Part shown: piece by piece, positions 29,782-44,565 of the stretch | How positions within the stretch are numbered: position 1 is the first letter of the stretch | How the letters are laid out: every line of letters begins with the position of its first letter | Virus record (IMG/VR): IMGVR_UViG_3300028654_000001 | Location: 434,001-498,000 of that record | Strand: one strand, 5' to 3' | Length of the DNA stretch: 64,000 bases | The notes under the pieces: model-generated | Databases searched by the model: none | Told to the model about the DNA's origin: nothing | The model's input: only the letters and a program-made list of their open reading frames with translations | Program-made: the position numbers and the translations under genes

Positions 29782-29883
29782 AGGAGAGACAAGAAGAGCG
29801 AAAAGAGTGCTCACCTAATGAGCTACCCACCCGAAGGCGGCTACGGAGTTGAACCATTGTACTTCTCGCGGGCATTCTCCCCT
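29782..29883 (-). ncRNA. Y RNA-like (YrlA-type) gene with permuted tRNA domain
   Basis: GGAGAAUGC...AGUACAAU...CUUGUCUCUCC; T arm, UUCG-closed acceptor, D arm. Confidence 0.75.
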
Positions 29884-29887
29884 TTAG

Positions 29888-29959
29888 AGCGGGTAACCAG
29901 ACTCGAACTGGTGACATTCAACTTGGAAGGATGACGTTCTACCACTGAACTATACCCGC
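29888..29959 (-). tRNA. tRNA-Gly(TCC)
   Basis: Cloverleaf. Confidence 0.9.
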
Positions 29960-29964
29960 ATTAG

Positions 29965-30036
29965 AGTCGAGGATGAGATTCGAACTCACATACAACGGTT
30001 TTGCAAACCGCCCCCTGACCATTCGGGCACCTCGAC
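29965..30036 (-). tRNA. tRNA-Cys(GCA)
   Basis: TT GCA AA, U73. Confidence 0.9.
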
Positions 30037-30047
30037 GTAATGTATAG

Positions 30048-30120
30048 AGCGGGCGATCGGGATCGAACCGACCAGATCCTGATTGGCAACCAGGTACCTC
30101 ACCGTTGAGGAGTCACCCGC
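30048..30120 (-). tRNA. tRNA-Gly(GCC)
   Basis: Cloverleaf. Confidence 0.88.
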
Positions 30121-30122
30121 AC

Positions 30123-30157
30123 AAAAAGAAGGAAGCCCGGTTCTCACTAGGCTTCCT
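30123..30157 (-). terminator. Intrinsic terminator inside the array
   Basis: GGAAGCCT/GGGCTTCC stem followed by TTCTTTTT. Confidence 0.55.
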
Positions 30158-30228
30158 ACAGGGGCGAACCGGTTTCCCAGTTTTGCCCTCCACCACGGAT
30201 TACCCACGTTTTACGGGGTTATCTCCGG

Positions 30229-30301
30229 AGCCCACACCCGGACTTGAACCGGGCACCCCGTCCTTACCAAGGACGTGCTCTACCAAATGAGCTATGCGGG
30301 C
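30229..30301 (-). tRNA. tRNA-Thr(GGT)
   Basis: Cloverleaf. Confidence 0.9.
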
Positions 30302-30302
30302 A

Positions 30303-30617
30303 TTATGACTTACGGTTAGGGAACTTTGACTTGGGGTTGACTGAGAACCCCAAAAGAAGGTTGTGGTCATTATCATCGTAGTTCCCGCAAAGGTACCCAA
30401 CCTCGGTACCCGGGATGGTCCCTATGACCCCATTGAGGAGGCCTAGGATGCTAAGAGTGGTTCGGTTAGCCACCCGAACTTGAACCGTAGGGTGATCTGC
30501 TAGGACCTCATTCGCCGGAACTCGATGGGCGAACAAGGCCTTGATGGCCTCAGGATCAATCTGAAAGTATTCATTGAGGCACTTCACAATGTGCTCTGCT
30601 AGCTCTATCTGATCCAT
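30303..30617 (-). CDS. Hypothetical phage protein (LADHPTVQV, LGLLNG)
   Basis: ATG 30617 after GGTGTA. Confidence 0.7.
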   Translation of the reverse strand: MDQIELAEHIVKCLNEYFQIDPEAIKALFAHRVPANEVLADHPTVQVRVANRTTLSILGLLNGVIGTIPGTEVGYLCGNYDDNDHNLLLGFSVNPKSKFPNRKS

Positions 30618-30635
30618 GATAACCAGATACACCAG

Positions 30636-30708
30636 AGCGGGAAAAGGGACTCGAACCCTCGACATTTTGGTTGGGAACCAAGTACTCTACCAACTGAGTT
30701 ACTCCCGC
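30636..30708 (-). tRNA. tRNA-Gly(CCC)
   Basis: Cloverleaf. Confidence 0.9.
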
Positions 30709-30712
30709 AAAA

Positions 30713-31264
30713 TCAGATCTTCTTCTCGATCTCTTCCCACACCTCGAGTGCGGCCTGAGTCCTCTTCATATCAGCTTCTGACTCAGGCCTAGGTATGCCA
30801 TTGATCTCAAAGACAGCGGTAGCGGAGATCAATGCTTTGAGCAACTTGATTTTCTGCTTGGTGAAAGCCTTGAGAACCTTGAAGTCAGCTTTGGGGAAAG
30901 CTTCTACGAAGTCCAGGACATCCGTCTCGTCCGTGTACTCAGTGATGGCTGCCCAAGTCACATGCTCCTGATTGTCCAAGTACATGCACGCGGCTATCAT
31001 CACGTAGGTACTTGCCTTGGGCTTGTTCCACGTACCAGGACGAGCCTTCGGATTCATTGTCTGACTACAGAATCGCCACCCTTTCTTTGGAGCATACTCG
31101 AGCCAGTAACGAATGGTTGTTCGAAGCTTGAACCCATAGGGGTAGTCATTGACGAAGTACCCATTCTCCTTGCTGTCGTAGCCATACAGGGGCTTGCCAA
31201 ACTTGTTGGCAAGCTTGACTGTTTGCAGATACCCCTTTATGACCCGAGCAACTAGAAGATCCAT
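30713..31264 (-). CDS. Hypothetical protein (DYPYGFKLRT)
   Basis: 183-aa ORF between tRNAs; N-terminal RV motif. Confidence 0.7.
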   Translation of the reverse strand: MDLLVARVIKGYLQTVKLANKFGKPLYGYDSKENGYFVNDYPYGFKLRTTIRYWLEYAPKKGWRFCSQTMNPKARPGTWNKPKASTYVMIAACMYLDNQEHVTWAAITEYTDETDVLDFVEAFPKADFKVLKAFTKQKIKLLKALISATAVFEINGIPRPESEADMKRTQAALEVWEEIEKKI

Positions 31265-31292
31265 ACCTGATTGATTGAGATAAGAGGATTAG

Positions 31293-31366
31293 AGCTGACG
31301 AGGAGAATCGAACTCCTAACCCCTGGTTTACAAAACCAGAGCTCTACCGGATTGAGCTACATCAGC
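31293..31366 (-). tRNA. tRNA-Thr(TGT)
   Basis: Cloverleaf. Confidence 0.9.
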
Positions 31367-31501
31367 ATTGGGTTACTATTGCCAGTGGATTATCCCCGTT
31401 CTGGCCCGGAGTAACCACCGGTATTGGCAGCGATTGTACATTACTCTCTAGGTTCACGCGTAGTACCCAGATCATCTGGCCTAAGGCATTGCCAGATCCA
31501 G

Positions 31502-31574
31502 TGGATCGGAGGAGAGTTGAACTCCTGCTCTCTCCCGTGCGAGGGGAGCGTTTTCCCAATTAAACTACCGACCC
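31502..31574 (-). tRNA. tRNA-Ala(CGC)
   Basis: CT CGC AC; G3:U70. Confidence 0.88.
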
Positions 31575-31586
31575 CATGAAGTTTAG

Positions 31587-31686
31587 TGCCGAGTGCATTG
31601 CCGAGTCGAACGGCTTCTCAATCCAGAGCGAGGGAGGAAATGAACCTCCACAGGGCGTCCCCTGCACGACCAATCATACACTCGAC
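31587..31686 (-). ncRNA. Unclassified tRNA-like RNA
   Basis: Long terminal stem GTCGAGTGTAT/ATGCACTCGGC, T arm gccg-TTCGACT-cggc, two internal hairpins. Confidence 0.5.
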
Positions 31687-31687
31687 A

Positions 31688-31764
31688 TGGTGGAAGTGAA
31701 GGGACTCGAACCCTCAACCTTTGGCTTGCAAAGCCACTGCTCTCCCAAATTGAGCTACACCCCC
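31688..31764 (-). tRNA. tRNA-Ala(TGC)
   Basis: Cloverleaf, G3:U70, CCA. Confidence 0.92.
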
Positions 31765-31767
31765 ATA

Positions 31768-31977
31768 TTACTGGTCAACAATCTCTACTTCACTCTCTTT
31801 CCACCAGTAGAGTGGAAAGTCCAACATCACATACCCTATGTAAGGTGGGTGATTTGGCATACTTGTAACAACTCGTGTACTGGGTAATGGCTTTTCGATA
31901 TCAAGCCCATTACGTAACAGGTAGTTATTCCAGGCCTCGGGTTTAATCTTTACGAGTGTACCTACTGAAAGATCCAT
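31768..31977 (-). CDS. Hypothetical protein
   Basis: GGTGTA upstream. Confidence 0.6.
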   Translation of the reverse strand: MDLSVGTLVKIKPEAWNNYLLRNGLDIEKPLPSTRVVTSMPNHPPYIGYVMLDFPLYWWKESEVEIVDQ

Positions 31978-32175
31978 ACGGATCTATACACCATATCAGT
32001 GATAATTATCAGGACGCTGACAACTACTATCATGATGAAGATACTCACCTTGATAGCACCAAGAATCACAGTAACCACAGACTTGAACGGTGGGTTCCTT
32101 TTTGGGTTCCGACTTATGTTCCTTCAAAATCTCTGCTTCCATGGTAACCTCAACTGAGTCACAAAAAAAGAAGAT

Positions 32176-32419
32176 TGGTGGACAGGATCGGAATCGAACC
32201 GACAATCAACACATTGACCTCTTAGGACAACACGCTTCCCTAGCGACCTGGGGTCTCCATGCCATTCGGTGCTTCTGAAACCTTGGTCAAACCTTCCAGA
32301 GTTGTCAAGGCCCGAGCCGCGCCCTGCCTCGCTCCCCTCTTTCCAGCTATGCGTTGGGGAGTCAACCCAATCACAACCTTGTTTTTAGTGGTGCCTTCCC
32401 AATTTAGGCTATCCAGCCC
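32176..32419 (-). ncRNA. tRNA-Ala-like RNA with ~170-nt structured insert replacing the anticodon arm
   Basis: GGGCTGG/CCTGTCC-ACCA with G3:U70, D arm and T arm intact. Confidence 0.6.
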
Positions 32420-32901
32420 ATAGTGGAACATGCCGGACTCGAACCGGCCACCTCTTGCCTGCCAGGCAAGCGCTCTCCCAGATGAGCTAATGCCCCATTC
32501 TTTCTACCGTGACCTACGTTAAGAGACCCAAATGTTGGGGTAAGCGAGTGACAGTTTGGACATAAGAAGGTCAGGTTGGTTTCGATTGAGTTGTGAGGAT
32601 TTCCGTCTAGGTGCTCAACATTCACAGGGACCTTACCTGTTACCGGGTTCTTCTCAGCCCAATCACACCTAGTACAGTTTTCTCCGTACTTACTTATGAG
32701 GTACCTGCGAACATGACTTGAGACCCTAAGGTCTCGGCCATGACTGATGTTACCTGTTTCAAGACCCGACTTCCATCGATCAATGTACTCAAGGTACTGT
32801 TGCTCAAGCTGGCAGTAGTTCGAACAGTACTTGCTCCTGAGGTTGGTGACAGATTTGCCGCATATTGGGCATGGTTTTCTATCCCTACGGGGTCTAGCCA
32901 T
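32404..32901 (-). CDS. HNH endonuclease reading through tRNA-Ala(GGC)
   Basis: CPICG, YCSNYC, VEHLDGN...NLTFLCPNCHSLT. Confidence 0.85.
   Translation of the reverse strand: MARPRRDRKPCPICGKSVTNLRSKYCSNYCQLEQQYLEYIDRWKSGLETGNISHGRDLRVSSHVRRYLISKYGENCTRCDWAEKNPVTGKVPVNVEHLDGNPHNSIETNLTFLCPNCHSLTPTFGSLNVGHGRKNGALAHLGERLPGRQEVAGSSPACSTMGWIA
32424..32496 (-). tRNA. tRNA-Ala(GGC)
   Basis: Cloverleaf, G3:U70. Confidence 0.9.
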
Positions 32902-32943
32902 GCTTTATGGAGAGCATAGGTGAATTACCAGACCGCTCTCACA

Positions 32944-33432
32944 TTACTTACGAATCTTGGACATGAGCTTTCGACCCATGTTCATCATGTGCATACCTAC
33001 AACCTCTGGATCAGCTACAATCTCTTTCAATTCAACTAGCTTTGAAAAGTCTGGCTTACCACTGATTGTGAATGGTATGTATGACATGCTGATAGTTGTC
33101 ATCTCTCCACGAATCCCTAGGTGCATCGCTATTGAGTCAACGGGTTGGGGTGGGGCAAAAAAGTAATAGATCTCATGTAAACGCGCTGAAGCGTTCACTG
33201 AGTATTTATCCCCAAGAGTCTTCCGAAACAAGTTCAGCAAATTAGGTAGGAGTAAGTTTACGGACTCCTTAGCCAGAGCAAAAATAGGTTTATCACCAGA
33301 GGGGGCAAAAGCTAGCTTGTCCTGAAACCTAGAGAAAACCCAATCAGGGATTGGTGGGTTCCACCCTGACATGGCTACCCGGAAGTTCCAGCTGGCGACA
33401 ACTCTTCTAACTAGAGGATCCATTCTAGCCAA
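32944..33432 (-). CDS. Hypothetical protein with RVVASW motif
   Basis: 162-aa ORF. Confidence 0.65.
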   Translation of the reverse strand: MARMDPLVRRVVASWNFRVAMSGWNPPIPDWVFSRFQDKLAFAPSGDKPIFALAKESVNLLLPNLLNLFRKTLGDKYSVNASARLHEIYYFFAPPQPVDSIAMHLGIRGEMTTISMSYIPFTISGKPDFSKLVELKEIVADPEVVGMHMMNMGRKLMSKIRK

Positions 33433-33451
33433 GGAAGGCTATAGATAGTTC

Positions 33452-33667
33452 CTACTTGCTGTACTTCCGGATGTGATGCACAACCCCTTGAGGGTCATAT
33501 TGATCAAAGTAATCAGCAACTTGCTCACGCTCCGTGTGAAGTTCAGCAAGCTCTTTGATTGTCAACTTGCGGTGATTGCGAATGCCATCCGTTGTTTGGA
33601 GCATACACATTCCACAGCAGCCCTTGATTCCAGCTCTACGCCGGTGATTCCGTTTGAAGTTTGCCAT
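33452..33667 (-). CDS. Small basic Cys-containing protein
   Basis: MANFKR...CCGMC; SD GGAG. Confidence 0.6.
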   Translation of the reverse strand: MANFKRNHRRRAGIKGCCGMCMLQTTDGIRNHRKLTIKELAELHTEREQVADYFDQYDPQGVVHHIRKYSK

Positions 33668-33713
33668 GAGATCTCCGTGCCGCCGTCAGCGGCTTGAACG
33701 TGATCTCAGACAA

Positions 33714-33789
33714 TGGTTGGGATGCAGGGATTCGAACCCCGATACACGGCACCAGAAACCGCGGCCCTAGCCAGTTAGACGACATCCCA
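33714..33789 (-). tRNA. tRNA-Gln(CTG)
   Basis: Cloverleaf, CCA. Confidence 0.9.
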
Positions 33790-33794
33790 ATGCG

Positions 33795-34031
33795 TTATGA
33801 ACCTTGAAGGAAGCCAGCGAGTAAGTCAAGTTGATTTGTTCTAGGTAGTGGCTTGAGTAACTCGAGCTCCGCCTCGAACTCCCTCAAGGGGGCTAGAGCT
33901 GCTTCTAGATCCACATCCACTACATCTTCGGACACTGCCCTTAGTGAAGAGGCCCAGCAGGCATAGCTGCAGTATTCGGCTCTAGGATAGACAACCGGTC
34001 TGACACCACACCACGGACAAGGTCTCTTCAT
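33795..34031 (-). CDS. Small Zn-finger protein
   Basis: CPWCG...YCSYAC. Confidence 0.55.
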   Translation of the reverse strand: MKRPCPWCGVRPVVYPRAEYCSYACWASSLRAVSEDVVDVDLEAALAPLREFEAELELLKPLPRTNQLDLLAGFLQGS

Positions 34032-34041
34032 AGGACATTAG

Positions 34042-34114
34042 CAGGGGCACAGAGACTCGAACTCATGATTGGCGGTTTTGGAGACCGCTTTCCTACCAAT
34101 TGAAAGATACCCCT
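34042..34114 (-). tRNA. tRNA-Trp(CCA)
   Basis: CT CCA AA. Confidence 0.9.
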
Positions 34115-34150
34115 AGAGTTACACCAAGTAATTGAAACAAGTAAAAAGGT

Positions 34151-34229
34151 TGGCGGAGCTGATGGGATTCGAACCCACGATCTATACCTTGACAGGGTAC
34201 TGGGGACGGCCGGACTCCCCTACAGCTCC
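34151..34229 (-). tRNA. tRNA-Asp(GTC)
   Basis: CT GTC AA, G73, CCA. Confidence 0.9.
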
Positions 34230-34264
34230 GTAGTATCACCACAATCGCCAGAATCGCTATCCAT
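34220..34264 (-). CDS. Asp-rich mini-ORF MDSDSGDCGDTTEL* ending inside tRNA-Asp
   Basis: Strong SD AAAGGAG; four GAT codons. Confidence 0.5.
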   Translation of the reverse strand: MDSDSGDCGDTTEL

Positions 34265-34283
34265 AAAGCATCTCCTTTCGTTT

Positions 34284-34820
34284 TCAGTAATCGTAATAGG
34301 AACTCTCCCTAGGGAGTTCCAGGTGGTAAAGCTTCAACTTCGCAACATTAGAGGGTGCGTGAGTGTACTTCGAGAACAGGTCCCAGGCATGAGTAAGCCC
34401 GCAACCAGGACGTTTCTCTGGCCAGGGTTGGATATTATCCCAGATCCTCTCGAGACGAGTAGGTGGAGGGATATGTTCCTCGTGGAACAATAGAAGGAAC
34501 TCTGGCTTGAGCAAAGGATCACTTGGCTCATTGTAGATCTTCATCCCGTAGCCGCCGAACATCCCAGTGCAGGTCATCTCGATGGGAGGGTCATACTCTT
34601 CAATGAGTCGGATCACCCTCTCGAACTCTGCGGTCTCGTAGGCCTGAACAACAGGCTTGGAGAACCCACCCTTCTCGTAAGGGTAGTACTTGTTGTGAAG
34701 CTCTTTGAGCCACACCACAGCTTCATCAGGGAAGGTGCTCAATACAGAGTGTCCATTGAGAAAAGGTCTCCGTACTTTGAGTCCCTCACCATACAGTAAG
34801 GAGGCGTAGGGTGCCCGCAA
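34284..34820 (-). CDS. Hypothetical protein (start uncertain)
   Basis: Long ORF between RNA genes. Confidence 0.55.
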   Translation of the reverse strand: MRAPYASLLYGEGLKVRRPFLNGHSVLSTFPDEAVVWLKELHNKYYPYEKGGFSKPVVQAYETAEFERVIRLIEEYDPPIEMTCTGMFGGYGMKIYNEPSDPLLKPEFLLLFHEEHIPPPTRLERIWDNIQPWPEKRPGCGLTHAWDLFSKYTHAPSNVAKLKLYHLELPRESSYYDY

Positions 34821-35008
34821 TTGCAGATTGGAGCAACCAAGCCCCTCATTGTACCCTGTACGAAAGGGATCGTAGTCTCAGTCATCTTTCCACATTTGTA
34901 ACAGGGGTAGCTAAATGGTTCTAGGTCATAACGCTTTGCCCAGAGCTTAGGGTCTACCCCGTAGCAGATCAACCGATGAGGTATTGGAGGGTAGCGTCTA
35001 CGTGCCAT
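34739..35008 (-). CDS. Small Zn-ribbon protein
   Basis: CYKCG...CNCGH from ATG 35008. Confidence 0.55.
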   Translation of the reverse strand: MARRRYPPIPHRLICYGVDPKLWAKRYDLEPFSYPCYKCGKMTETTIPFVQGTMRGLVAPICNCGHPTPPYCMVRDSKYGDLFSMDTLY

Positions 35009-35017
35009 AAGAGTTAC

Positions 35018-35148
35018 GCGGAGACAAGAAGTGCAGGGACTGTTTTGGGACCATTGCTCTGCCAGTTGAGCTACGCCTGCCAAAGCTGACGACGGGAATC
35101 GAACCCGCAACCCACGGTTTAGATTGTAGTCTCTACGATATTCTCCGC
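35018..35148 (-). ncRNA. Y RNA-like gene with permuted tRNA domain
   Basis: GCGGAGAAUAUC...GACUACAAUC...CUUGUCUCCGC; T arm then D arm. Confidence 0.78.
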
Positions 35149-35152
35149 ATAG

Positions 35153-35224
35153 TACCCCCGACAGGAGTCGAACCTGTGACCTTGAACTTAGGAAGTTCCT
35201 GCTCTTCCTCTGAGCTACGAGGGC
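35153..35224 (-). tRNA. tRNA-Arg(CCT)
   Basis: TT CCT AA. Confidence 0.88.
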
Positions 35225-38061: not shown

Positions 38062-38077
38062 ACTAAAGTTACACCAG

Positions 38078-38423: not shown

Positions 38424-38436
38424 GTAAAATTGTGAT

Positions 38437-39207
38437 CTAAATCTCGAGATCATCTAAAAGAGACTCTAGGTCACCTTGGATGTACTCGAAGATCGACTGG
38501 TTGCCATCAAAGTACTTAGTCACACCCTGACCAACCTTGGTCTCTACTACATCAGTGCTAATCTCTTCAAAGTTAGATGGAAGTGCATCCTCCCACTCAT
38601 CATAGTTAGTAGGAAGGTTGTGTATCCACTCCTTGAAGAAAGCGAAACTACCGTAATCATGGTCAGAAGGTGAGAAGTCTGGGATGTAGCTATGAACCTG
38701 ATCCAGAGCCCTCTGTTGTTTAGAGAAGTCTAATGACTTCAACCAACTTAGATCCTCCTCTGTAGGAGCATCCTCAGGGAATGACCCAATACGATCTATC
38801 AGATCGTTCCGATCAAAATCAACAAGTACTTTGGCTATAGGAGAATCATCAATATCACTGTAGATATCGTCAGCATTGAAGTCATATCGTTGAAGAAGAA
38901 GCCCGATTAGCTTAAGTTCTCGCTTGAGTTCTTTTTGTAGGTTGGGTAAGTCAGAGGGATCATCTATTAAAGACTTGAATCGATGAGTGTATTCCTTGTC
39001 TAACTTCTTCAACCTAGAATCAATGTCCAGGAGTTTTCTGGTCTTATCACTCAAGGGTTTCGAGTCGAACGCTTTACTCATGGTATCTAATAAAGAGAGA
39101 GGCCCCGATAGATTCCACTCCTTGAATGTATACCAAGCTAGATTGAGTCTTCGGACATCAACCGCAGCTTTATACCTAGCAACCACCCGAGAAACTAGAG
39201 AACTCAT
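38437..39207 (-). CDS. Acidic hypothetical protein with RVVARYKAA motif
   Basis: 256-aa ORF. Confidence 0.7.
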   Translation of the reverse strand: MSSLVSRVVARYKAAVDVRRLNLAWYTFKEWNLSGPLSLLDTMSKAFDSKPLSDKTRKLLDIDSRLKKLDKEYTHRFKSLIDDPSDLPNLQKELKRELKLIGLLLQRYDFNADDIYSDIDDSPIAKVLVDFDRNDLIDRIGSFPEDAPTEEDLSWLKSLDFSKQQRALDQVHSYIPDFSPSDHDYGSFAFFKEWIHNLPTNYDEWEDALPSNFEEISTDVVETKVGQGVTKYFDGNQSIFEYIQGDLESLLDDLEI

Positions 39208-39235
39208 ATTGTAGATCTGAATACGAAAAGAATAG

Positions 39236-39307
39236 TCGGGGTGGTCAGACTTGAACTGACGGCCTCATGCTCCCAAAGCACGCGATCTACCACTGATCTA
39301 CACCCCG
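39236..39307 (-). tRNA. tRNA-Pro(TGG)
   Basis: Cloverleaf. Confidence 0.9.
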
Positions 39308-39370
39308 GTAACGATTACTCTTCTAGCACTTGGAGGGCAGGGTACCACATTACCCATCAAGTGGTATTAG

Positions 39371-39454
39371 TGCATCAGAGAGGACTTGAACCTCCACGGG
39401 TATTACCCCACTTGCACCTCAAGCAAGCGTGTTTGCCAGTTACACCACTGATGC
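39371..39454 (-). tRNA. tRNA-Leu(GAG)
   Basis: Class II. Confidence 0.9.
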
Positions 39455-39511
39455 ATATGTTAGTAAGATATGTCTAGGAAACCAAAGGTTTAACCCAAAC
39501 AAAAAAAATTC

Positions 39512-39620
39512 AAGGAAAAAGCCGCTAAGTCACCCCTGACAAGGGGTGCATAAGACTCGTTTTCAACCATAGAATGTAGTCCCACACAGTATTCAGGGGC
39601 TACTTAGCGGCTATTTCCTT
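39512..39620 (-). ncRNA. Minimal Y RNA-like gene with extended stem followed by a U tract
   Basis: CCCCUGAAUAC...GGACUACAUUC...CUUGUCAGGGG inside a ~19-bp outer stem. Confidence 0.68.
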
Positions 39621-39624
39621 AAAA

Positions 39625-39860
39625 GTTTGACCTCGACAAGTGGTGACAGAGAGGGTTTTTGTGGCCTACACATTGATGGCCCATCTTTCGATGGGTGACA
39701 TCCGTTCGTCCCGAGCCTTCGGCTCCCGACTAGTCTAAGTAGACGAGAGTCTCTGAGCCCTTGTTAAAGGGGCTACTGGCTCCATCGCTAGTCCCTCACG
39801 GGGCATCGCTACCTTAGGACCGTTATCGATTGTACTCCTTGTCGGTATTCGAGGTCGAAC
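39625..39860 (-). ncRNA. Large (236 nt) Y RNA-like gene with multi-hairpin domain
   Basis: GACCUCGAAUAC...GGAGUACAAUC...CUUGUCGAGGUC; own GGTGTATA promoter. Confidence 0.72.
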
Positions 39861-39940
39861 GAGATATACACCGATCTGATACCCAAGTGCAATAGGGAAA
39901 GTTGTCGGGGTGAAAGGATCTTCAACCTAGGTCAGCTAAT

Positions 39941-40017
39941 TGGTCAGGGCAGCCAGAGTTGAACTGGCGATCTTGTGTTCCCGAAACACACGCTTTACCA
40001 GGCTAAGCTATACCCTG
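39941..40017 (-). tRNA. tRNA-Pro(CGG)
   Basis: TT CGG GA, CCA. Confidence 0.88.
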
Positions 40018-40527
40018 AAGAGATAATTTCCCCTCGTGCACCCCAGCGTGACAGTTTCTACATAAGAGCACACAATTTTGAAGTTCTTGCTCTATCCGTT
40101 GCCAAGACCAACCCCTCCAACCTGAAAAGTTTGGGTCTTTCTTGCTAGGATCAAGGTGGTGCATATCTAGAGCTGACTTAAAAACATCAAACCCACAAAT
40201 ACGACAGTTACCACCGAGGTAAGCTATAACCTTACCCTTCTTTTCTTGACCCTTAGTTATGCAGTAATTATTGTGACACCTACCGCACACTTTTAGCTTA
40301 TGCCCATAAAACTTGGTGAGGTCGTCTTCACCACAGTATATACACTTGCGGGGTTTCCCATTAGGGTTTGGATCATTCGGAAGTTTTCCATATGGGCCTC
40401 GTTTGGTATGAAGCTCATACTTATTAAGCCAATATCTAACATTTGTGAAAGAGGTGTTTAGATCTATGGCAATCTGCCTTACACTCTTCCATTGCTGAAG
40501 ATGTAGGATAAGAACTTCTTTTTCCAT
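40003..40527 (-). CDS. HNH endonuclease ending inside tRNA-Pro(CGG)
   Basis: N-terminal HTH, GGNCRICG, ALDMHHLDP, CVLLCRNCH. Confidence 0.85.
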   Translation of the reverse strand: MEKEVLILHLQQWKSVRQIAIDLNTSFTNVRYWLNKYELHTKRGPYGKLPNDPNPNGKPRKCIYCGEDDLTKFYGHKLKVCGRCHNNYCITKGQEKKGKVIAYLGGNCRICGFDVFKSALDMHHLDPSKKDPNFSGWRGWSWQRIEQELQNCVLLCRNCHAGVHEGKLSLQGIA

Positions 40528-40588
40528 TATTCAGAGTGTAGCTCAGATTAGTAAAGGTACCAGATTGAGCTATACCCTGATGAAAGTT

Positions 40589-40748
40589 GGCCGCTACTGG
40601 CGGGTTTCCCCGGCCAGTTACCAGAGCTTGCCTCTATCCGCTGCTTGCAACGGGGTCTACGGCAAGATGCCCAAGCCCGCGGTCTTTGCCAGGCTTGGAG
40701 ATTCAGCTAGCCCGGTCCTTGTAGAGGCCCGGATGATCATTGCTAGCC
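40589..40748 (-). ncRNA. Unclassified GC-rich multi-hairpin RNA
   Basis: Intergenic, GGCTAGC/GCGGCC ends, several stems including CGGG-GAAA-CCCG. Confidence 0.4.
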
Positions 40749-41111
40749 TTATGAAAGTTCTTTGGAATCGTGTAGTCGACGCATCTGAATCTCGGCAGTA
40801 TTCAGGGCGGCTTGGTAAACTGTGGATTCCCAGGGACTCAAGGACGCTTTATTTGGCTTGAACAAAGCCTTCTTCAAGAAGATCCCATCCATGCGGCCAC
40901 ATCTCTTGAGCTCGATTGGATTATCGATGATGAGGCCCAGAATGCCCATCGAGGCGTCCGAGGCCCCGCACCAAGAGTCATCCCCACTGTTATTGAAGAT
41001 GGCCCCAGAGAGGGCTATCTTACCGCACTGGAGGATGGTCAGGTGCCTCACCACAGGGGCGGGCATCCTAGCCAGGGTATCACCGATGAGGGTTCCTCGT
41101 TTGAGTGACAT
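40749..41111 (-). CDS. Hypothetical protein
   Basis: ATG 41111 after GGTGTATTAT. Confidence 0.6.
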   Translation of the reverse strand: MSLKRGTLIGDTLARMPAPVVRHLTILQCGKIALSGAIFNNSGDDSWCGASDASMGILGLIIDNPIELKRCGRMDGIFLKKALFKPNKASLSPWESTVYQAALNTAEIQMRRLHDSKELS

Positions 41112-41128
41112 GCTGAATAATACACCAG

Positions 41129-41202
41129 TCAGGGTAAATGGACTCGAACCATCGACCTCTTGCTCCCCGAGCAAGCGCTCTACCAAACTGAGCTACACCC
41201 TG
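41129..41202 (-). tRNA. tRNA-Pro(GGG)
   Basis: TC GGG GA. Confidence 0.88.
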
Positions 41203-41205
41203 ATA

Positions 41206-41349
41206 GTCACGAAGACAAGAATTCGAAAGAGAAACGTACGGCGTCTTGACCGCTAGACGACCCCCGCATAGGCTTGAGCGGAGGGAGGGATTCGAACCCC
41301 CGATATCCGGCTTGGATGGCAATGTACTCCTTCAGGCATTCTTCGTGGT
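41206..41349 (-). ncRNA. Y RNA-like gene with permuted tRNA domain
   Basis: CACGAAGAAUGC...GGAGUACAUU...CUUGUCUUCGUG; T arm, closed acceptor, D arm. Confidence 0.78.
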
Positions 41350-41955
41350 GGTTGGAGGCGGAGTTGAACCGCCGACACCTTGATTTTCAGTCAAGTGCTC
41401 TACCGACTGAGCTATCCAACCGTTAGGCAAATCAAAGTCAAGAAGATCTCCTTCATACCTCTCTGCCTCAGCAATAAGCAATGAGTCCTCTCTGGTTGAA
41501 TGCTCTATTCTGTGGCAACAAGAGCAGAGCAACTCACACTTCTCAAGTTCTTTCTTCAGTACACTCCAACTCTTGTTAGCTAAACCACCAAAGTTGAAGT
41601 CCTTATCACGTAGGTGGTGGAACTCAAAGGCTGACTGATGCCCAGACCACCCACACCTAATACATTTCCCACCCAGCATCTTGATCCCAGTAGCTTTAGC
41701 TCGATATCTACGGATCTTGGTGTTGCAAGAGTTGCATCTACGTCTACGACTACTCCCATTAAGTCTACCGCAAATCACACATGAGTCATACGTTGGTGAT
41801 TGAATCAACTCGACCCTAAGACCTGACTTGAATGGGACACAAGTAAGGCAAGCTCTTCTCCTGTTGAGAACCCTAATGGTACCATCAACAATGACCCGAT
41901 TAGGGAAGTTTACCTTGCATACTCGACAGGTAGGCATACCAAAAATATAGCACAA
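41332..41955 (-). CDS. HNH endonuclease reading through tRNA-Phe
   Basis: GGKCIRCG, FEFHH, KCELLCSCCH. Confidence 0.85.
   Translation of the reverse strand: MCYIFGMPTCRVCKVNFPNRVIVDGTIRVLNRRRACLTCVPFKSGLRVELIQSPTYDSCVICGRLNGSSRRRRCNSCNTKIRRYRAKATGIKMLGGKCIRCGWSGHQSAFEFHHLRDKDFNFGGLANKSWSVLKKELEKCELLCSCCHRIEHSTREDSLLIAEAERYEGDLLDFDLPNGWIAQSVEHLTENQGVGGSTPPPTTTKNA
41346..41421 (-). tRNA. tRNA-Phe(GAA)
   Basis: Cloverleaf, CCA. Confidence 0.92.
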
Positions 41956-41956
41956 T

Positions 41957-42042
41957 TGGTATCGGAGGAGGGACTCGAACCCTCAAGGGATTTCTCCCAG
42001 CAGTATTTGAAGCTGCCGCGTTTGCCTTTTCGCCACTCCGGC
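41957..42042 (-). tRNA. tRNA-Leu(CAA)
   Basis: Class II, CCA. Confidence 0.88.
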
Positions 42043-42048
42043 ATGTAG

Positions 42049-42130
42049 TACCCAAGGAGAGACTTGAACTCTCACGTCACAAGGACCACCGGTTCTGAGC
42101 CGGCGCTGTACGCCATTCCAGCACTTGGGC
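42049..42130 (-). tRNA. tRNA-Leu(CAG)
   Basis: Class II. Confidence 0.88.
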
Positions 42131-42132
42131 AT

Positions 42133-42205
42133 GGACCAGAGACAAGAAGTGCAGAGAGGGTGTTTTCTCCAATTGAATTGTACTCCCCACGAGCATTCTC
42201 TGGTT
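42133..42205 (-). ncRNA. Minimal Y RNA-like gene
   Basis: ACCAGAGAAUGC...GGAGUACAAU...CUUGUCUCUGGU. Confidence 0.72.
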
Positions 42206-42280
42206 TGGTCGGCCGAGGTGGACTTGAACCACCGTTACACGCGTATCAGGCGTAGATCCTAACCATTAGAAGACCGGCCG
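42206..42280 (-). tRNA. tRNA-Ile(GAT)
   Basis: tacgc-CT GAT AC-gcgtg, CCA; Gln/Glu-like D arm. Confidence 0.8.
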
Positions 42281-42664
42281 TCGTCGCATCCCATTGGTTC
42301 GATACCTGTGACAGAGAGCGCAAACAAGCTCACACTTGGCGATCTCCTCAAGTAATCTTTCAACGGAGGTGCATTTTGAATTTGCACGAGCTATCTCAAA
42401 AGACTTTGTTGTTGGGTCAAGATGATCAAAGTCCATAGCCCAGTAAGGGTGTGGCTCTCCACAATCTGTACAAGGCTTGCCACTCTTGGCCTCCTGGATG
42501 ACCCTCTTGATTTCAGCTCTGATCTTTACCTTATCCTTTCTAACTCTGGCACATTGACACAACTTGCAGTACCCCATGAGGTACTTACCCCTCCCGTGAA
42601 ACTCACGTTCGGACTTAGTTTGAGTGCAAGCCGGGCAATACTTGGTGCGCTTAGCTTTCGGTAT
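42266..42664 (-). CDS. HNH endonuclease ending inside tRNA-Ile; frame extends upstream to an ATA
   Basis: KYCPAC...YCKLC, PCTDCG, MDFDHLDP, KCELVCALCH. Confidence 0.75.
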   Translation of the reverse strand: MPKAKRTKYCPACTQTKSEREFHGRGKYLMGYCKLCQCARVRKDKVKIRAEIKRVIQEAKSGKPCTDCGEPHPYWAMDFDHLDPTTKSFEIARANSKCTSVERLLEEIAKCELVCALCHRYRTNGMRRRPVF

Positions 42665-42702
42665 ACTGGTGATAACTACACCAATGAGTTATCACCGAAA
42701 GT

Positions 42703-42842
42703 GAGCGAAGACAAGAGAGTGAAAGACAAGGGAACCCTTCTAAATACCACTCGTGAAGCTTTCACTTCACGGCAGGATCTGCCCCTGCAAAGCTCCCGGG
42801 CGTAAGCCCCCGGATAATGAAGTCCTTCTTGCATTCTTCGCT
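42703..42842 (-). ncRNA. Y RNA-like gene with three-hairpin domain
   Basis: GCGAAGAAUGC...GGACUUCAUU...CUUGUCUUCGC. Confidence 0.72.
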
Positions 42843-42929
42843 TGGTAGCCCCTCCCGGACTCGAACCGGGACGTCACGAAGGACAGGAGGGTTTAAGCCT
42901 CCCCCGTCTGCCAGTTCCAGCAAGGAGCC
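42843..42929 (-). tRNA. tRNA-Leu(TAA)
   Basis: Class II, CCA. Confidence 0.88.
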
Positions 42930-42932
42930 ATG

Positions 42933-43121
42933 TTAGTCTTTGGTCTTCCAGATCTCGTCTGTAATTGGAGGGAGCAGCTCGCCAGCCTCAAGGGCTCTTC
43001 GACGGTCTTCCTCCATACGAATCTTCATCTCTTCATAACGGAGGCGATCCTCCTCCGTCTCCTCGGGCTCTGGGATGATCCCACCCTCTTCAGCTATCAC
43101 CCTAGTCTGAACTATAACCAT
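42933..43121 (-). CDS. Small acidic hypothetical protein
   Basis: Co-oriented ORF. Confidence 0.45.
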   Translation of the reverse strand: MVIVQTRVIAEEGGIIPEPEETEEDRLRYEEMKIRMEEDRRRALEAGELLPPITDEIWKTKD

Positions 43122-43290
43122 CGGAGGCCCAACCCTTCCCTTGAAGTTGAAAACCTGTGCCGCCGCTTATGAGCCTCTTGGCTTCTGGCTTGTCGCACTT
43201 GGGGCAATCCGTCAACGGAGGCTCCGTAATCTTCTGGTCAGCCTCCCAGGTGTGTTGGCAGGCCTTGCATTGGTACTCGTAAGTCGGCAC
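43102..43290 (-). CDS. FmdB-family zinc-ribbon protein
   Basis: PTYEYQCKAC...CPKC...RLIS...FQLQGKGW...Y from GTG 43290. Confidence 0.85.
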   Translation of the reverse strand: MPTYEYQCKACQHTWEADQKITEPPLTDCPKCDKPEAKRLISGGTGFQLQGKGWASDGYSSD

Positions 43291-43300
43291 TTGATTACCC

Positions 43301-43762
43301 TTAGGATGGCATTGGGCCTGGGCCAATGTTGACTTCGTGTTTGACCCGGGTGAACCTATCGAACAGCGGCTTACCACCAAGGAGTTTGATGAGTCGGCAC
43401 CGGGTCTTGAAGATGATCCTATGAAGACGGTTTGGATCTGGAGGTGGTGGTGGCTCATACTTGTGCCAATGATTTCTTGCAGAACTCAAAGATGCTATTA
43501 GACATTGAACACCACCAGGGTCAGGTATCGCATCCGGGTACCCAGCTTCGACCTTGGTAGTACTAATCACCGAGGTTCCCCAAAGGTGCCCTACTAAATT
43601 ACCACCCCACTCTGGTCTGGGTTCTGACTTACCAAGTAACTCATAGTCACCATGAGCAGCAAGAACTGGTACATCTTCTGGGTGAACAAGAAGTACTGCT
43701 ACTCGCAGATCTTCACATTCAACCCTAGACAAGGTATCAGAAACATCATGAAGCGTGATCAT
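43301..43762 (-). CDS. Hypothetical protein
   Basis: ATG 43762 after GGTGTA; GHLWGT segment similar to GLLWST in 28580-29089. Confidence 0.6.
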   Translation of the reverse strand: MITLHDVSDTLSRVECEDLRVAVLLVHPEDVPVLAAHGDYELLGKSEPRPEWGGNLVGHLWGTSVISTTKVEAGYPDAIPDPGGVQCLIASLSSARNHWHKYEPPPPPDPNRLHRIIFKTRCRLIKLLGGKPLFDRFTRVKHEVNIGPGPMPS

Positions 43763-43781
43763 AAAGATCACTACACCGAAG

Positions 43782-44291
43782 CTATCGAATACTAGAACCA
43801 AGGAACCTGAACGCCACCCGTGTTTCAACAGAAGCCTCTTTGGCCTTCTGCACGAATTGACGCATCTTTCCCTTGAGGATATCTATGTCGTCTTGAGTAG
43901 CTGGACGTCCAAGTTGAGTACTCAGAGCCTTACTCCACTGTTGAACGAATGGATCCTTGGGGTCAGGCTTCGGAGCATCCTTGGGCTTCTTATCGAAGAC
44001 TGGGGCATCTTTGGCCTTCTCCTTTTGGACAAACTGCTTCATCTGTCCTTTGAGAATGTCGATATCGGCCTCCGTTGCAGGCCTACCAAGATTATCACTA
44101 AGCGCCTTCTGCCACTGATTCTTAAAGTGGTCATCCTTGCCACCTTCAGACTTAGGAGCTGGAGGCTTACCCTTGTTCTCAACCACCCGGTGCTTGTGCT
44201 TGTCAGCTTTCGGGTGAGCTTTCAGATAGGTATCCAAAGCCTCTTGAGTTGGGAACTCCTTAGCAAGTTTGGTATCTTCCATAATGACCAC
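43782..44291 (-). CDS. Hypothetical protein with internal ~35-aa duplication
   Basis: QW.KALS..LGRPAT..DIDILKG.M.QFVQK occurs twice. Confidence 0.7.
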   Translation of the reverse strand: MVIMEDTKLAKEFPTQEALDTYLKAHPKADKHKHRVVENKGKPPAPKSEGGKDDHFKNQWQKALSDNLGRPATEADIDILKGQMKQFVQKEKAKDAPVFDKKPKDAPKPDPKDPFVQQWSKALSTQLGRPATQDDIDILKGKMRQFVQKAKEASVETRVAFRFLGSSIR

Positions 44292-44338
44292 ACTCAGGAC
44301 AAGAATAAGAACTATACCGTGATCTCAAAGAAGAGTTT

Positions 44339-44412
44339 TGGTGACCCCACCGGAATTTGAATCCGGACCACGGCCTTGAAAGGGCCGTCACCTACCGTTA
44401 GTGTATGGGGCC
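44339..44412 (-). tRNA. tRNA-Glu(TTC)
   Basis: CT TTC AA, CCA. Confidence 0.85.
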
Positions 44413-44417
44413 GTTAG

Positions 44418-44492
44418 CGTCCCTGAGGGGCGATGATCCCCTTTCAGCAGCTTGAGAGGCTACTATCCTAACCAAACGTAGACGACAGGGAC
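44418..44492 (-). tRNA. tRNA-Glu(CTC)
   Basis: CT CTC AA; atypical T loop. Confidence 0.8.
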
Positions 44493-44498
44493 ATGATA

Positions 44499-44565
44499 GG
44501 TGAGACAAGGGACAAACTAGAGAGGTTCAATTATCGAGATTGTACTCCAGTTCAGCATTCTCACC
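44499..44565 (-). ncRNA. Minimal Y RNA-like gene
   Basis: GGUGAGAAUGC...GGAGUACAAUC...CUUGUCUCACC. Confidence 0.72.

What the first reader, a model, noticed from the sequence alone, without database searches (positions are those of the whole stretch)
29782..44565. Eight modular Y-RNA-like genes with a shared stem and interchangeable effector domains, plus a phage Ro60
Seen: eight elements (29782, 35018, 39512, 39625, 41206, 42133, 42703, 44499) share a covarying terminal stem with 5' GAAU(G/A)Y, an RA(G/C)U(A/U)CA(A/U)U motif and 3' CUUGUC. Inserts differ: three circularly permuted tRNA domains, three minimal, one three-hairpin, and one multi-hairpin domain in a 236-nt RNA. Six start 0-5 nt after a tRNA 3' end, suggesting release by tRNA processing. 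Known: bacterial YrlA Y RNAs mimic tRNA and bind Ro60/Rsr, and in Deinococcus a Y RNA tethers Rsr to PNPase. Inference: one Ro60 (61833-63482) served by a repertoire of adaptor or decoy RNAs, possibly anticodon-less decoys for tRNA-targeting defences.
Basis: partly seen in the sequence, partly recalled or inferred. Interest (0 to 1): 0.85.

Follow-up and report, generated by a model that had tools for sequence, protein, structure and literature searches.

The report
Eight Y RNAs in phage tRNA array
A 512-kb soil phage carries eight small RNA genes that share the binding module of bacterial Y RNAs but differ in their inner domains, sit between its tRNA genes and probably all serve its single Ro60 protein, which enlarges a known RNA-protein system.

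Summary
Eight elements, all on the minus strand inside the 41-tRNA array, share a closing stem, a 5' GAAU(G/A)Y motif, an upper stem ending in RASUWCAWU and a 3' CUUGUC motif. A scan found 8, against 0.18 expected from shuffles.

The shared motifs are the consensus Ro60-binding module of Rfam YrlA. Three elements (e1, e2, e5) match YrlA full length at 27-41 bits. That is below the cut-off of 69, but a recognised mycobacteriophage YrlA scores only 36.

The ORF at 61833-63482 is a real Ro60/Rsr homologue.

The same scaffold recurs in about 30 other large-phage contigs and in bacterial rsr loci. It occurs 2-8 per locus, always on the Ro60 strand (86 to 0) and often directly beside Ro60. Both stems covary strongly.

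Across tRNA-rich loci, 69% of elements begin within 10 nt (almost all -2 to +4) of a tRNA 3' end, which supports release by tRNA processing.

One new detail: the 228-nt RNA holds a 21-nt exact copy of 23S rRNA (H69/H70), kept in two other phages.

Modular Y RNAs and phage Ro60-Y RNA pairs are already known. This is an expanded, tRNA-interleaved variant. Binding and function remain untested.

The parts
29782..29883 (-). e1: 102-nt Y RNA with a compact tRNA-like (T loop, acceptor-like hairpin, short D hairpin) module
   Evidence: Scan. Fold. Rfam YrlA 27 bits, E 0.05, full length. Model R1 20.5 bits, E 1e-3, although e1 was not in the training set. Starts 3 nt after tRNA-Gly(UCC).
35015..35151 (-). 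e2: 137-nt YrlA-like Y RNA with a canonical T arm, acceptor-like hairpin and D arm
   Evidence: Rfam YrlA 41 bits, E 5e-6, model positions 1-114. The module family is shared by 9 contigs. Abuts tRNA-Arg(CCU) at 35152-35224.
39501..39623 (-). Long outer hairpin (39512-39623) that encloses e3, followed by a U8 run; terminator-like end of the tRNA-Pro/e4/e3 unit
   Evidence: Fold -56.1 kcal/mol, z -8.4. The U run is read from the sequence.
39532..39600 (-). e3: 69-nt minimal Y RNA core
   Evidence: Scan. Fold z -2.9. R1 51.6 bits (e3 was in the training set).
39629..39856 (-). e4: 228-nt Y RNA with a multi-hairpin insert
   Evidence: Scan. Fold. Relatives of the same class at L014:432-651 and L005:209-412.
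39806..39826 (-). 21-nt stretch inside e4 identical to 23S rRNA A1916-A1936 (3' half of H69 and the junction after it)
   Evidence: blastn 21/21 to the 23S gene in all 5426 E. coli genomes. Position checked. Same 20-mer in L005 and a 13-mer plus near matches in L014.
41208..41347 (-). e5: 140-nt YrlA-like Y RNA, sandwiched between tRNA-Phe and tRNA-Pro(GGG)
   Evidence: Rfam YrlA 36.3 bits, E 1e-4, with the alignment shown. Gaps to the flanking tRNAs are -2 and 5 nt.
42135..42204 (-). e6: 70-nt minimal Y RNA, between tRNA-Ile and tRNA-Leu(CAG)
   Evidence: Scan. R1 52 bits. Gaps 1 and 4 nt. Orthologue at L007:3-73.
42704..42842 (-). e7: 139-nt Y RNA with three hairpins, abutting tRNA-Leu(UAA)
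   Evidence: Fold. Orthologue L007:524-659 keeps the structure through 5 double changes.
44499..44565 (-). e8: 67-nt minimal Y RNA, between a tRNA-like element and tRNA-Glu(CUC)
   Evidence: R1 59.7 bits. Orthologues at L010:2024-2090 and L012:10054-10120.
44569..44651 (-). Unannotated class-II tRNA-like element (anticodon loop CCUGAAA) directly 5' of e8
   Evidence: Rfam tRNA-Sec model 39.1 bits, below the cut-off of 47, E 1e-4. Not called by ARAGORN.
25244..45593 (-). Array of 41 tRNA genes, with HNH-type ORFs between them, in which the eight Y RNAs are embedded
   Evidence: ARAGORN and Rfam. HNH domains in Pfam.
61833..63482 (-). Ro60/Rsr homologue. The mechanical ORF runs to the GTG at 63542; the ATG at 63482 is the likely start.
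   Evidence: Pfam vWA_Ro60 and TROVE. PDB 2nvo, 9nen, 9l5y, 1yvp. Relatives align from residue 18-21 onward.

Best explanation
The eight elements are genuine Y RNAs of the YrlA lineage.

Each carries the same Ro60-binding module: a closing stem, an asymmetric internal loop (5' AUGC, 3' CUUG) and an upper stem ending in UACAU. Each carries a different inner domain.

They are transcribed as part of the phage's long tRNA-array precursors. They are cut out by the enzymes that mature the neighbouring tRNAs. RNase P at the next tRNA sets their 3' end. An endonuclease acting at the preceding tRNA's 3' end sets their 5' end.

The phage Ro60 ring (61833-63482) then binds and stabilises them through the shared module.

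The inner domain decides what each particle touches. The three tRNA-like ones behave like YrlA, docking a tRNA-recognising factor or an exoribonuclease such as host PNPase. The three minimal ones mainly gate the Ro60 cavity. The long one presents a copy of a 23S rRNA segment.

Shown here: the elements, their structure, their kinship to YrlA, their linkage to Ro60 genes, and their abutment to tRNAs. Inferred: processing, binding, and what each module does.
For: There are eight copies against 0.18 expected by chance, all on the tRNA strand.

The Rfam YrlA consensus itself reads CgaAUGC...CUAc...CUuGuc, and e2, e5 and e1 align to it full length.

A recognised mycobacteriophage YrlA next to its Ro gene scores only 36 bits, so scores below the cut-off are normal for phage YrlA.

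The upper stem was not used in the scan. Cognate strands pair at 7.5 of 8 positions, non-cognate strands at 5.9 of 8.

A covariance model aligned 62 elements. 89.9% of cells are paired against 60.5% in shuffles and 32-47% in slid controls, and 13 of 14 pairs show double changes.

Ten contigs were found by DNA pattern alone, and seven of them encode Ro60. Only about 95 Ro60-bearing contigs were detected among 2.9 million IMG/VR contigs.

In 80 Ro60 loci there are 86 elements on the Ro60 strand and none on the other strand.

In the bacterial genome collection, all 7 pattern hits that have the closing stem lie next to a Ro60 gene, and the 19 hits without the stem do not.

Of 51 elements in tRNA-rich loci, 35 start within 10 nt (almost all -2 to +4) of a tRNA 3' end and 29 end 3-10 nt before the next tRNA.

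Published work shows that Thermus phage phiLo Ro60 binds two phage Y-like RNAs and host PNPase (PMC12135203), and that M. smegmatis YrlA is an RNase P substrate (PMC4201824).
Against: There is no expression or binding evidence. No RNA sequencing run that holds the region was listed.

None of the elements reaches the Rfam cut-off for YrlA.

In this genome the RNAs lie 17-32 kb from Ro60, not within the 4 kb typical of YrlA.

Three of the six upstream tRNAs encode CCA. CCA disfavours RNase Z in some bacteria, so the enzyme that makes the Y RNA 5' end is unclear.

Myxococcus phage Mx1 has the closest cultured Ro60, set in a tRNA array, but shows no recognisable scaffold.
Confidence: 0.75

Rival explanations
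1. The RNAs are mainly decoys or sponges. Their tRNA-like and rRNA-like domains soak up host factors such as defence nucleases, toxins or modification enzymes. Ro60 only protects them from decay.
For: The modules mimic the tRNA elbow and a 23S rRNA segment. The phage invests in 41 tRNAs, a tmRNA and a Tpt1 RNA 2'-phosphotransferase, which fits a conflict over host translation RNAs. A Ro60-like protein of phage Bas63 counters the Ppl defence system (PMC11482910).
Against: The tRNA-like modules lack an anticodon loop and a free CCA end, so they cannot mimic the substrates of anticodon nucleases or of toxins that target the acceptor end. The three minimal RNAs have no obvious mimic domain. Nothing here tests this rival.
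Confidence: 0.15
2. The elements are structured spacers that help fold or punctuate the long tRNA precursors for RNase P and 3' processing. On this view they have no functional tie to Ro60.
For: They are tightly sandwiched between tRNAs. Other tRNA gaps in the window also fold strongly, for example 44813-44894 with z -5.4.
Against: The same scaffold occurs next to Ro60 in loci with no tRNAs at all (L028, L032, L045, L048, and the bacterial loci L146, L151, L156, L159). It matches the YrlA Ro60-binding module. It is found almost only in genomes that encode Ro60.
Confidence: 0.07
3. The elements are decaying repeats or footprints of mobile elements (the array is rich in HNH endonuclease genes) and have no RNA function.
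For: HNH-type ORFs lie among the tRNAs. A 22-nt partial copy of tRNA-Pro lies next to one of them.
Against: The copies differ greatly in sequence but keep both stems through compensatory changes. They all face the same way. The strand bias across 80 loci is 86 to 0.
Confidence: 0.03

Closest known systems
YrlA / YrlB bacterial Y RNAs (Rfam RF02553; Salmonella, M. smegmatis; Chen et al. 2014, PMC4201824)
   Same: The closing stem with the GAAUGC and CUUGUC internal loop and the upper stem is the same. e1, e2 and e5 have the same order of T arm, closed acceptor-like hairpin and D arm. Minimal partners like YrlB also occur. Both are encoded with an Ro60/Rsr gene on the same strand.
   Different: There are eight per genome, against the two or so characterised so far. 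Here they lie 17-32 kb from Ro60 and are scattered through a tRNA array. The base before GAA is A in 6 of 8 elements (U and C in the other two), with a compensating partner on the 3' strand in every element. Two inner domains (e4, e7) have no counterpart in YrlA or YrlB. Scores fall below the Rfam cut-off.
Mycobacteriophage YrlA next to the Ro-like gene (22 phages in Chen et al. 2014; CharlieB checked here)
   Same: A phage-encoded Ro60 with a tRNA-like Y RNA. The Rfam scores are similar (36 bits in CharlieB).
   Different: In CharlieB only one hit was seen within about 600 nt upstream and 1 kb downstream of the Ro gene, and it is not interleaved with tRNAs.
Thermus phage phiLo Ro60 with Yrl1 and Yrl2 and host PNPase (NAR 2025, PMC12135203; PDB 9l5y, 9kop)
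   Same: A phage Ro60 binds phage-encoded Y-like RNAs that have a 5'-3' stem and a CGAA-type motif. That work proposes hijacking of a host exoribonuclease. The window's Ro60 matches 9l5y and 9kop.
   Different: There are two RNAs directly upstream of the gene, against eight dispersed RNAs with distinct domains here. Binding is shown there and not here.
Phage Bas63 gp130, a Ro60-like protein that counters the Ppl defence system (preprint PMC11482910)
   Same: The Ro60-like gene sits beside a run of tRNA genes, and the authors guessed that some of them are Y RNAs.
   Different: No Y RNAs were defined there. The link to defence is genetic and concerns the protein.
Metazoan Y RNA families (human Y1, Y3, Y4, Y5; nematode stem-bulge RNAs)
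   Same: Several paralogues share one Ro60-binding stem and differ in the loop that recruits partners. The 3' strand CUUGAC resembles CUUGUC (from memory).
   Different: Those are separate Pol III genes, each with its own terminator, and have no tRNA-like domain. Here the RNAs are excised from polycistronic tRNA transcripts.

Membership tests
Y RNA (Ro60-associated noncoding RNA) | The 5' and 3' ends pair into a long stem that holds a conserved Ro60-binding site | tested here: met
   All eight fold this way. The motifs are invariant and both stems covary across 62 relatives.
Y RNA (Ro60-associated noncoding RNA) | Physically bound and stabilised by Ro60 | not testable with these tools
   Needs RIP or EMSA. 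No RNA run was listed.
Y RNA (Ro60-associated noncoding RNA) | Encoded in genomes that encode Ro60, usually near it and on the same strand | tested here: met
   Ro60 is in the window on the same strand. Seven of ten contigs found by pattern alone carry Ro60. The strand count is 86 to 0 in 80 Ro60 loci. All 7 stem-bearing hits in the genome collection lie next to Ro60.
Y RNA (Ro60-associated noncoding RNA) | Modular: a variable effector domain lies distal to the Ro60-binding stem | tested here: met
   There are four kinds of insert in the window. Across relatives the classes are 35 minimal, 26 mid-size (82-160 nt) with a T loop, 11 other mid-size, 3 with the 23S segment, and 2 other long ones.
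YrlA (Rfam RF02553) | Reaches the family's curated score (69 bits) | tested here: not met
   The best scores are 41, 36.3 and 27 bits, and no relative reaches 69. The mycobacteriophage CharlieB YrlA also reaches only 36.1 bits.
YrlA (Rfam RF02553) | tRNA-like domain with a T arm, a closed acceptor-like stem and a D arm | tested here: inconclusive
   Met by e1, e2 and e5. Not met by e3, e4, e6, e7 and e8, which share only the Ro60-binding module, as YrlB does.
YrlA (Rfam RF02553) | 5' motif GNCGAAN0-1G | tested here: inconclusive
   The core GAA-U is kept in all eight, and the following base is G in five and A in three. The C before GAA is A in 6 of 8 elements, U in e3 and C in e4, with a matching change on the 3' strand in every element. 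Relatives mostly read CGAAUGC.
YrlA (Rfam RF02553) | Within about 4 kb of rsr on the same strand | tested here: not met
   Same strand, but 17-32 kb away in the window. No element lies within 10 kb of Ro60 in this clade. The feature is met in many other phage and bacterial loci.
Ro60 / Rsr protein | TROVE/HEAT-repeat ring plus a Ro60-type vWA domain | tested here: met
   Pfam vWA_Ro60 5e-16 and TROVE 2e-6. A near full-length match to D. radiodurans Rsr 2nvo, 9.5e-13. The fold itself was not modelled.

The most novel reading that the evidence does not exclude
The array is a library of specificity adaptors for one Ro60 ring. Each inner domain would aim the particle, and any exoribonuclease it recruits, at a different class of host or phage RNA or at a different RNA-binding factor.

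The clearest case is the 228-nt RNA. Its exact copy of 23S rRNA A1916-A1936 would let it mimic the H69/H70 region. Alternatively it could pair with the freed partner strand of an unfolded 23S rRNA.

A further speculative point is that 23S rRNA continues with UUCCUUGUCGG, the H71 hairpin, then CGAAUGG. That stretch resembles the two strands of the Ro60-binding module with the hairpin opened. The module itself may therefore imitate this rRNA region.
Probability: 0.2. Interest if true: 0.85.

Novelty: new variant of a known kind. Interest (0 to 1): 0.62.

Why it matters
What Y RNAs do is still largely open. Only a few bacterial ones have been studied, usually one or two per species.

This natural set has eight RNAs on one scaffold with clearly different inner domains. 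It has dozens of related arrays in other large phages and in bacteria such as Methylocystis parvus. Together these give a ready-made comparison for asking what each domain recruits.

The tight tRNA-Y-tRNA packing predicts exact RNA ends, so the processing route is directly testable.

The rRNA-copy domain points to a link between Ro60 particles and the ribosome that could be checked by pull-down.

These RNAs are missed by Rfam at its curated cut-off. Phage annotators are therefore likely leaving many of them unlabelled, or calling them tRNA-like.

Tried and rejected
- **Rfam at curated cut-offs** found only tRNAs and a tmRNA. YrlA appears only in E-value mode.
- **megablast of the region against GenBank phages** found nothing relevant.
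- **MAFFT plus RNAalifold** recovered only the lower stem, because the 3' strand of the upper stem was misaligned. I got round this with a cognate versus non-cognate pairing test and a covariance model with a hand-set structure.
- **Model R1**, trained on minimal elements, does not find the long-insert members e2, e4, e5 and e7. The counts of relatives therefore rest partly on my own regular-expression scan.
- **Homology of e4 to 23S rRNA beyond the 21-mer** is not significant: local score 51 against a shuffle maximum of 49. I claim only the 21-mer.
- **The 23S-copy class** was found in only three IMG/VR contigs.
- **Myxococcus phage Mx1** has the closest cultured Ro60, set in a tRNA array. 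R1, the scan and Rfam all found no scaffold there.
- **The promoter and terminator scan** gave nothing above shuffles.
- **RNA sequencing runs:** none was listed. The DNA runs are rhizosphere metagenomes, and several independent samples hold the region, so it is not an assembly artefact.
- **Three review papers** could not be read because they are not held.
- **The fifth-strand-motif hit at about 50445** lies inside a sigma-factor-like ORF and has no partner, so I rejected it as chance.


Full report
**What the window is.** The 64-kb window has 48.5% G+C. It carries 41 tRNA genes and a tmRNA, all on the minus strand between 23.9 and 45.6 kb. It is part of IMG/VR contig IMGVR_UViG_3300028654_000001, 512,571 bp. 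The region is present in several independent rhizosphere metagenomes. No similar genome is in the GenBank phage collection at megablast level. Other genes in the window include RecA, a RecD-type helicase, an NAD ligase, ribonucleotide reductase, clamp-loader subunits, a chaperonin, a sigma-factor-like protein, peptide deformylase, dCTP deaminase, a Tpt1/KptA RNA 2'-phosphotransferase and several HNH endonucleases. I saw no structural genes, so the viral status rests on IMG/VR and on the relatives.

**Checking the observation.** I scanned for GAATRY and CTTGTC 40-320 nt apart, flanked by at least four contiguous complementary bases. The scan gives exactly eight hits on the minus strand and none on the plus strand. 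In 200 shuffles the mean was 0.18 and the maximum 2. The 5' motif alone, with no stem required, occurs nine times on the minus strand (the eight elements plus one inside an ORF) and once on the plus strand, against 1.25 in shuffles. The closing stems of the eight are therefore an independent observation.

All eight fold into one scaffold:
- a lower stem of about 8 bp, which includes the GA of GAAU paired to the UC of UUGUC;
- an asymmetric internal loop, 5' AUGCN and 3' NNCUUG;
- an upper stem of 8-11 bp with a purine-rich 5' strand;
- UACAAU, followed by a variable insert.

- e1, e2 and e5 have a T arm, a closed acceptor-like hairpin and a D arm;
- e3, e6 and e8 are 67-70 nt with almost no insert;
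- e7 has three hairpins;
- e4 is 228 nt with many hairpins.

e3 sits inside a 112-nt perfect hairpin followed by eight U. This looks like the terminator of the unit tRNA-Pro, e4, e3.

**What the shared motifs are.** In E-value mode Rfam reports YrlA (RF02553) at full length for three elements:

| Element | Coordinates | Bits | E-value |
|---|---|---|---|
| e2 | 35015-35148 | 41 | 5e-6 |
| e5 | 41206-41346 | 36.3 | 1e-4 |
| e1 | 29780-29882 | 27 | 0.05 |

The printed alignment shows the YrlA consensus itself: acggCgaAUGCuuggGgaaCUAc ... uucCccaaAaAcUuGucGccg.

The scores are below Rfam's cut-off of 69. However, the YrlA of mycobacteriophage CharlieB, one of the group in which phage YrlA was first reported (PMC4201824), scores only 36.1 bits next to its Ro-like gene.

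The ORF at 61833-63542 has the Ro60 vWA domain (5e-16) and TROVE (2e-6). It matches D. radiodurans Rsr over nearly its whole length (2nvo, 9.5e-13), and also human, Xenopus and Thermus phage phiLo Ro60.

**Relatives in other phages.** An exact-pattern scan of IMG/VR for the minimal type returned 14 loci. Ten of them, from ten contigs including the window's own, hold elements with the closing stem, usually several per locus. Protein-based scans found Ro60 relatives (36-67% identical) on about 95 IMG/VR contigs, mostly 100-450 kb. Seven of the ten contigs found by RNA pattern alone are among them. The three without a detected Ro60 are contigs of 19, 40 and 136 kb, so possibly incomplete genomes.

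In 80 Ro60 loci (857 kb, Ro60 on the plus strand) my strict scan finds 86 elements on the Ro60 strand and none on the other strand. Thirty loci have at least one, 21 at least two, and 7 at least four.

In many of these loci the RNAs lie directly beside Ro60. L028 has seven elements within 1 kb just 3' of the gene. L046 has eight around a Ro60 gene that itself sits inside a tRNA array. L032 has five or six just upstream.

In the window's own clade (Ro60 51-67% identical) no element lies within 10 kb of Ro60. There the RNAs sit in the tRNA array instead.

**Relatives in bacterial genomes.** The same pattern scanned over the collection of bacterial and archaeal genomes gave 26 hits. Seven have the closing stem, and all seven have a Ro60 gene (40-48% identical) in the same 8-kb locus, with three to six such RNAs beside it. 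Examples are the complete Methylocystis parvus chromosome and Hyphomicrobiaceae, Planctomycetaceae and Bacteroidota assemblies. The other 19 hits have neither a stem nor Ro60. Five of the seven loci have no separate tRNA gene; the one ARAGORN call, in L149, lies inside a Y scaffold. Multi-copy Y RNA arrays are therefore not specific to phages.

**Structure support.** The upper stem was not part of my scan. Across 80 elements, the 8 nt before UACA pair with the cognate 3' region at 7.5 of 8 positions, and 96% reach at least 7. With non-cognate partners the figures are 5.9 of 8 and 23%.

A covariance model built from 31 minimal elements (R1) recovers e1, which was not in the training set (20.5 bits, E 1e-3). 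It finds no further copy in the window. It finds 62 elements in 43 loci, all on the tRNA/Ro60 strand, and none in four control loci that were chance pattern hits.

On that alignment 89.9% of cells are paired, against 60.5% in shuffles and 32-47% when partners are slid. The covariation score is 0.74 against 0.21. Thirteen of 14 pairs show double changes. That alignment is fitted to the model, so one search is the cleaner test.

The orthologue of e7 in a close relative keeps its hairpins through five double changes.

**Link to tRNA processing.** In the window, e5, e7, e6, e2 and e1 start -2, 0, 1, 2 and 3 nt after an ARAGORN tRNA. e8 starts 3 nt after a tRNA-like element that only the Rfam tRNA-Sec model picks up (39 bits). 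e5, e6 and e8 also end 4-6 nt before the next tRNA.

Across all tRNA-rich loci, 35 of 51 elements start within 10 nt of a tRNA 3' end (almost all -2 to +4). Twenty-nine end 3-10 nt before the next tRNA, and 22 do both. L002 has runs such as tRNA, Y, tRNA, Y, tRNA with 1-8-nt spacers.

This makes co-transcription and release by tRNA-maturing enzymes the natural reading. RNase P at the downstream tRNA would set the 3' end. The 5' cut is less clear, because three of the six upstream tRNAs encode CCA. These steps are inferred, not shown. No RNA run holding the region was listed.

**Inner domains.** Comparing inserts by blastn shows that the e2-type tRNA-like domain is shared by nine contigs, the e4 type by three, and the e7 type only by a near relative. 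e1 and e5 have no close match. In some relatives the scaffold encloses an unpermuted tRNA-like sequence that reaches the Rfam tRNA cut-off (L046:4170-4238) or is called by ARAGORN (L149).

The most unexpected detail is in e4. Its nucleotides 31-51 (window 39806-39826) are identical to 21 nt of 23S rRNA in every E. coli genome. Using the A2058 landmark from memory, the stretch is A1916-A1936, the 3' half of helix 69 and the junction after it. A chance 21-mer match between 228 nt and one rRNA gene is of the order of 1e-7.

The same 20-mer sits at the same place, 5-6 nt after UACA, in a 204-nt element of a phage whose Ro60 is about 42% identical. A version with two changes sits in a 220-nt element of another phage. 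Similarity beyond this stretch is not significant. Only these three IMG/VR contigs match the exact pattern.

I also noticed that 23S rRNA continues AAUUCCUUGUCGGGUAAGUUCCGACCUGCACGAAUGG. This contains the Y RNA 3' motif, the H71 hairpin and then the 5' motif. It is a post hoc resemblance of short motifs, and I offer it only as an idea.

**Comparison with what is known.** These points are established:
- Y RNAs are modular (bioRxiv 10.1101/312249).
- Bacteria have at least two of them near rsr, and one mimics tRNA (PMC4201824).
- Some phages encode Ro60 with Y-like RNAs (PMC4201824).
- Thermus phage phiLo Ro60 binds two of them and forms a complex with host PNPase (PMC12135203).
- A preprint on phage Bas63 found that a Ro60-like protein counters the Ppl defence system, and guessed that some neighbouring 'tRNA genes' are Y RNAs (PMC11482910).

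I found no paper describing arrays of up to eight Y RNAs, their interleaving with tRNAs, or an rRNA-copy domain. Three reviews could not be read.

**Verdict.** The eight RNAs are best filed as Y RNAs of the YrlA lineage. Three have the tRNA-like domain and five share only the Ro60-binding module. What is new is the scale, the placement inside the tRNA array, which predicts processing, and the range of inner domains. It is therefore a new variant of a known kind. Binding to Ro60, accumulation as discrete RNAs and the role of each domain remain to be tested. The decoy idea is possible but unsupported. For enzymes that need an anticodon loop or a free CCA end it is unlikely.

Noticed in passing
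window 39806-39826 (-), L005:229-248, L014:470-482: A 21-nt exact copy of 23S rRNA A1916-A1936 lies inside the 228-nt Y RNA e4. It is kept at the same position in two other phages' long Y RNAs.
   Followed up: yes
E. coli 23S rRNA about 1937-1968 (L057:2228-2259) compared with the Y RNA scaffold: Right after the copied 21-mer, 23S rRNA reads UUCCUUGUCGG, then the H71 hairpin, then CGAAUGG. This resembles the 3' and 5' strands of the Ro60-binding module with the hairpin opened. Several elements match UUCCUUGUCGG(GU) over 11-13 nt. It is a post hoc resemblance of short motifs.
   Followed up: partly
window 44569-44651, 45677-45760, 36467-36541, 38337-38423, 25162-25233 (-): Five tRNA-like sequences are not called by ARAGORN but hit the Rfam tRNA-Sec model at 25-39 bits, below the cut-off. 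They are probably class-II tRNAs (Ser or Tyr type) with unusual loops. ARAGORN finds no Tyr or His tRNA and only one Ser tRNA in the window.
   Followed up: partly
window 23932-24281 (-): A phage-encoded tmRNA (Rfam 96 bits) with tag peptide VADLPRDSLGSG lies at the edge of the tRNA array.
   Followed up: no
window 19314-19868 and 20142-20705 (-): A Tpt1/KptA RNA 2'-phosphotransferase (4e-44) and a weak match to an Rv2179c-like 3'-5' exoribonuclease lie a few kb from the tRNA array. This hints at an RNA repair or turnover theme.
   Followed up: no
window 44813-44894 (-): An 82-nt spacer between tRNA-Thr(CGU) and tRNA-Met folds into three hairpins (-40.9 kcal/mol, z -5.4). It lacks the Y RNA motifs and may be another processed small RNA.
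   Followed up: partly
window 40528-40748 (-): A strongly folding 221-nt gap (z -5.8) holds a 22-nt copy (19 of 22 identical) of the 5' end of tRNA-Pro(CGG), just upstream of ORF 40003-40527. That ORF was not searched; its translation shows CxxC and histidine motifs, and other ORFs in the array are HNH endonucleases. The true tRNA-Pro follows the ORF. It looks like the footprint of an endonuclease gene insertion.
   Followed up: partly
L046:4143-4271, L046:5699-5851, L032:4650-4782, L149:5188-5459: In some relatives the Y scaffold encloses an unpermuted tRNA-like sequence. It reaches the Rfam tRNA cut-off or is called by ARAGORN as a tRNA with an odd anticodon. Annotators would label these as tRNAs.
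   Followed up: partly
L151 (Methylocystis parvus M6-2022 chromosome), L146, L149, L156, L159: Bacterial rsr loci carry three to six Y-scaffold RNAs of 63-288 nt beside the Ro60 gene, more than the two or so characterised in model species. M. parvus is a cultured organism in which this could be studied.
   Followed up: partly
L059 (Myxococcus phage Mx1, 48029-67561): The closest cultured-phage Ro60 (42.5% identical) also sits inside a tRNA array. My scan, model R1 and Rfam found no Y scaffold within 9 kb. Its Y RNAs, if it has any, must be of another type.
   Followed up: yes
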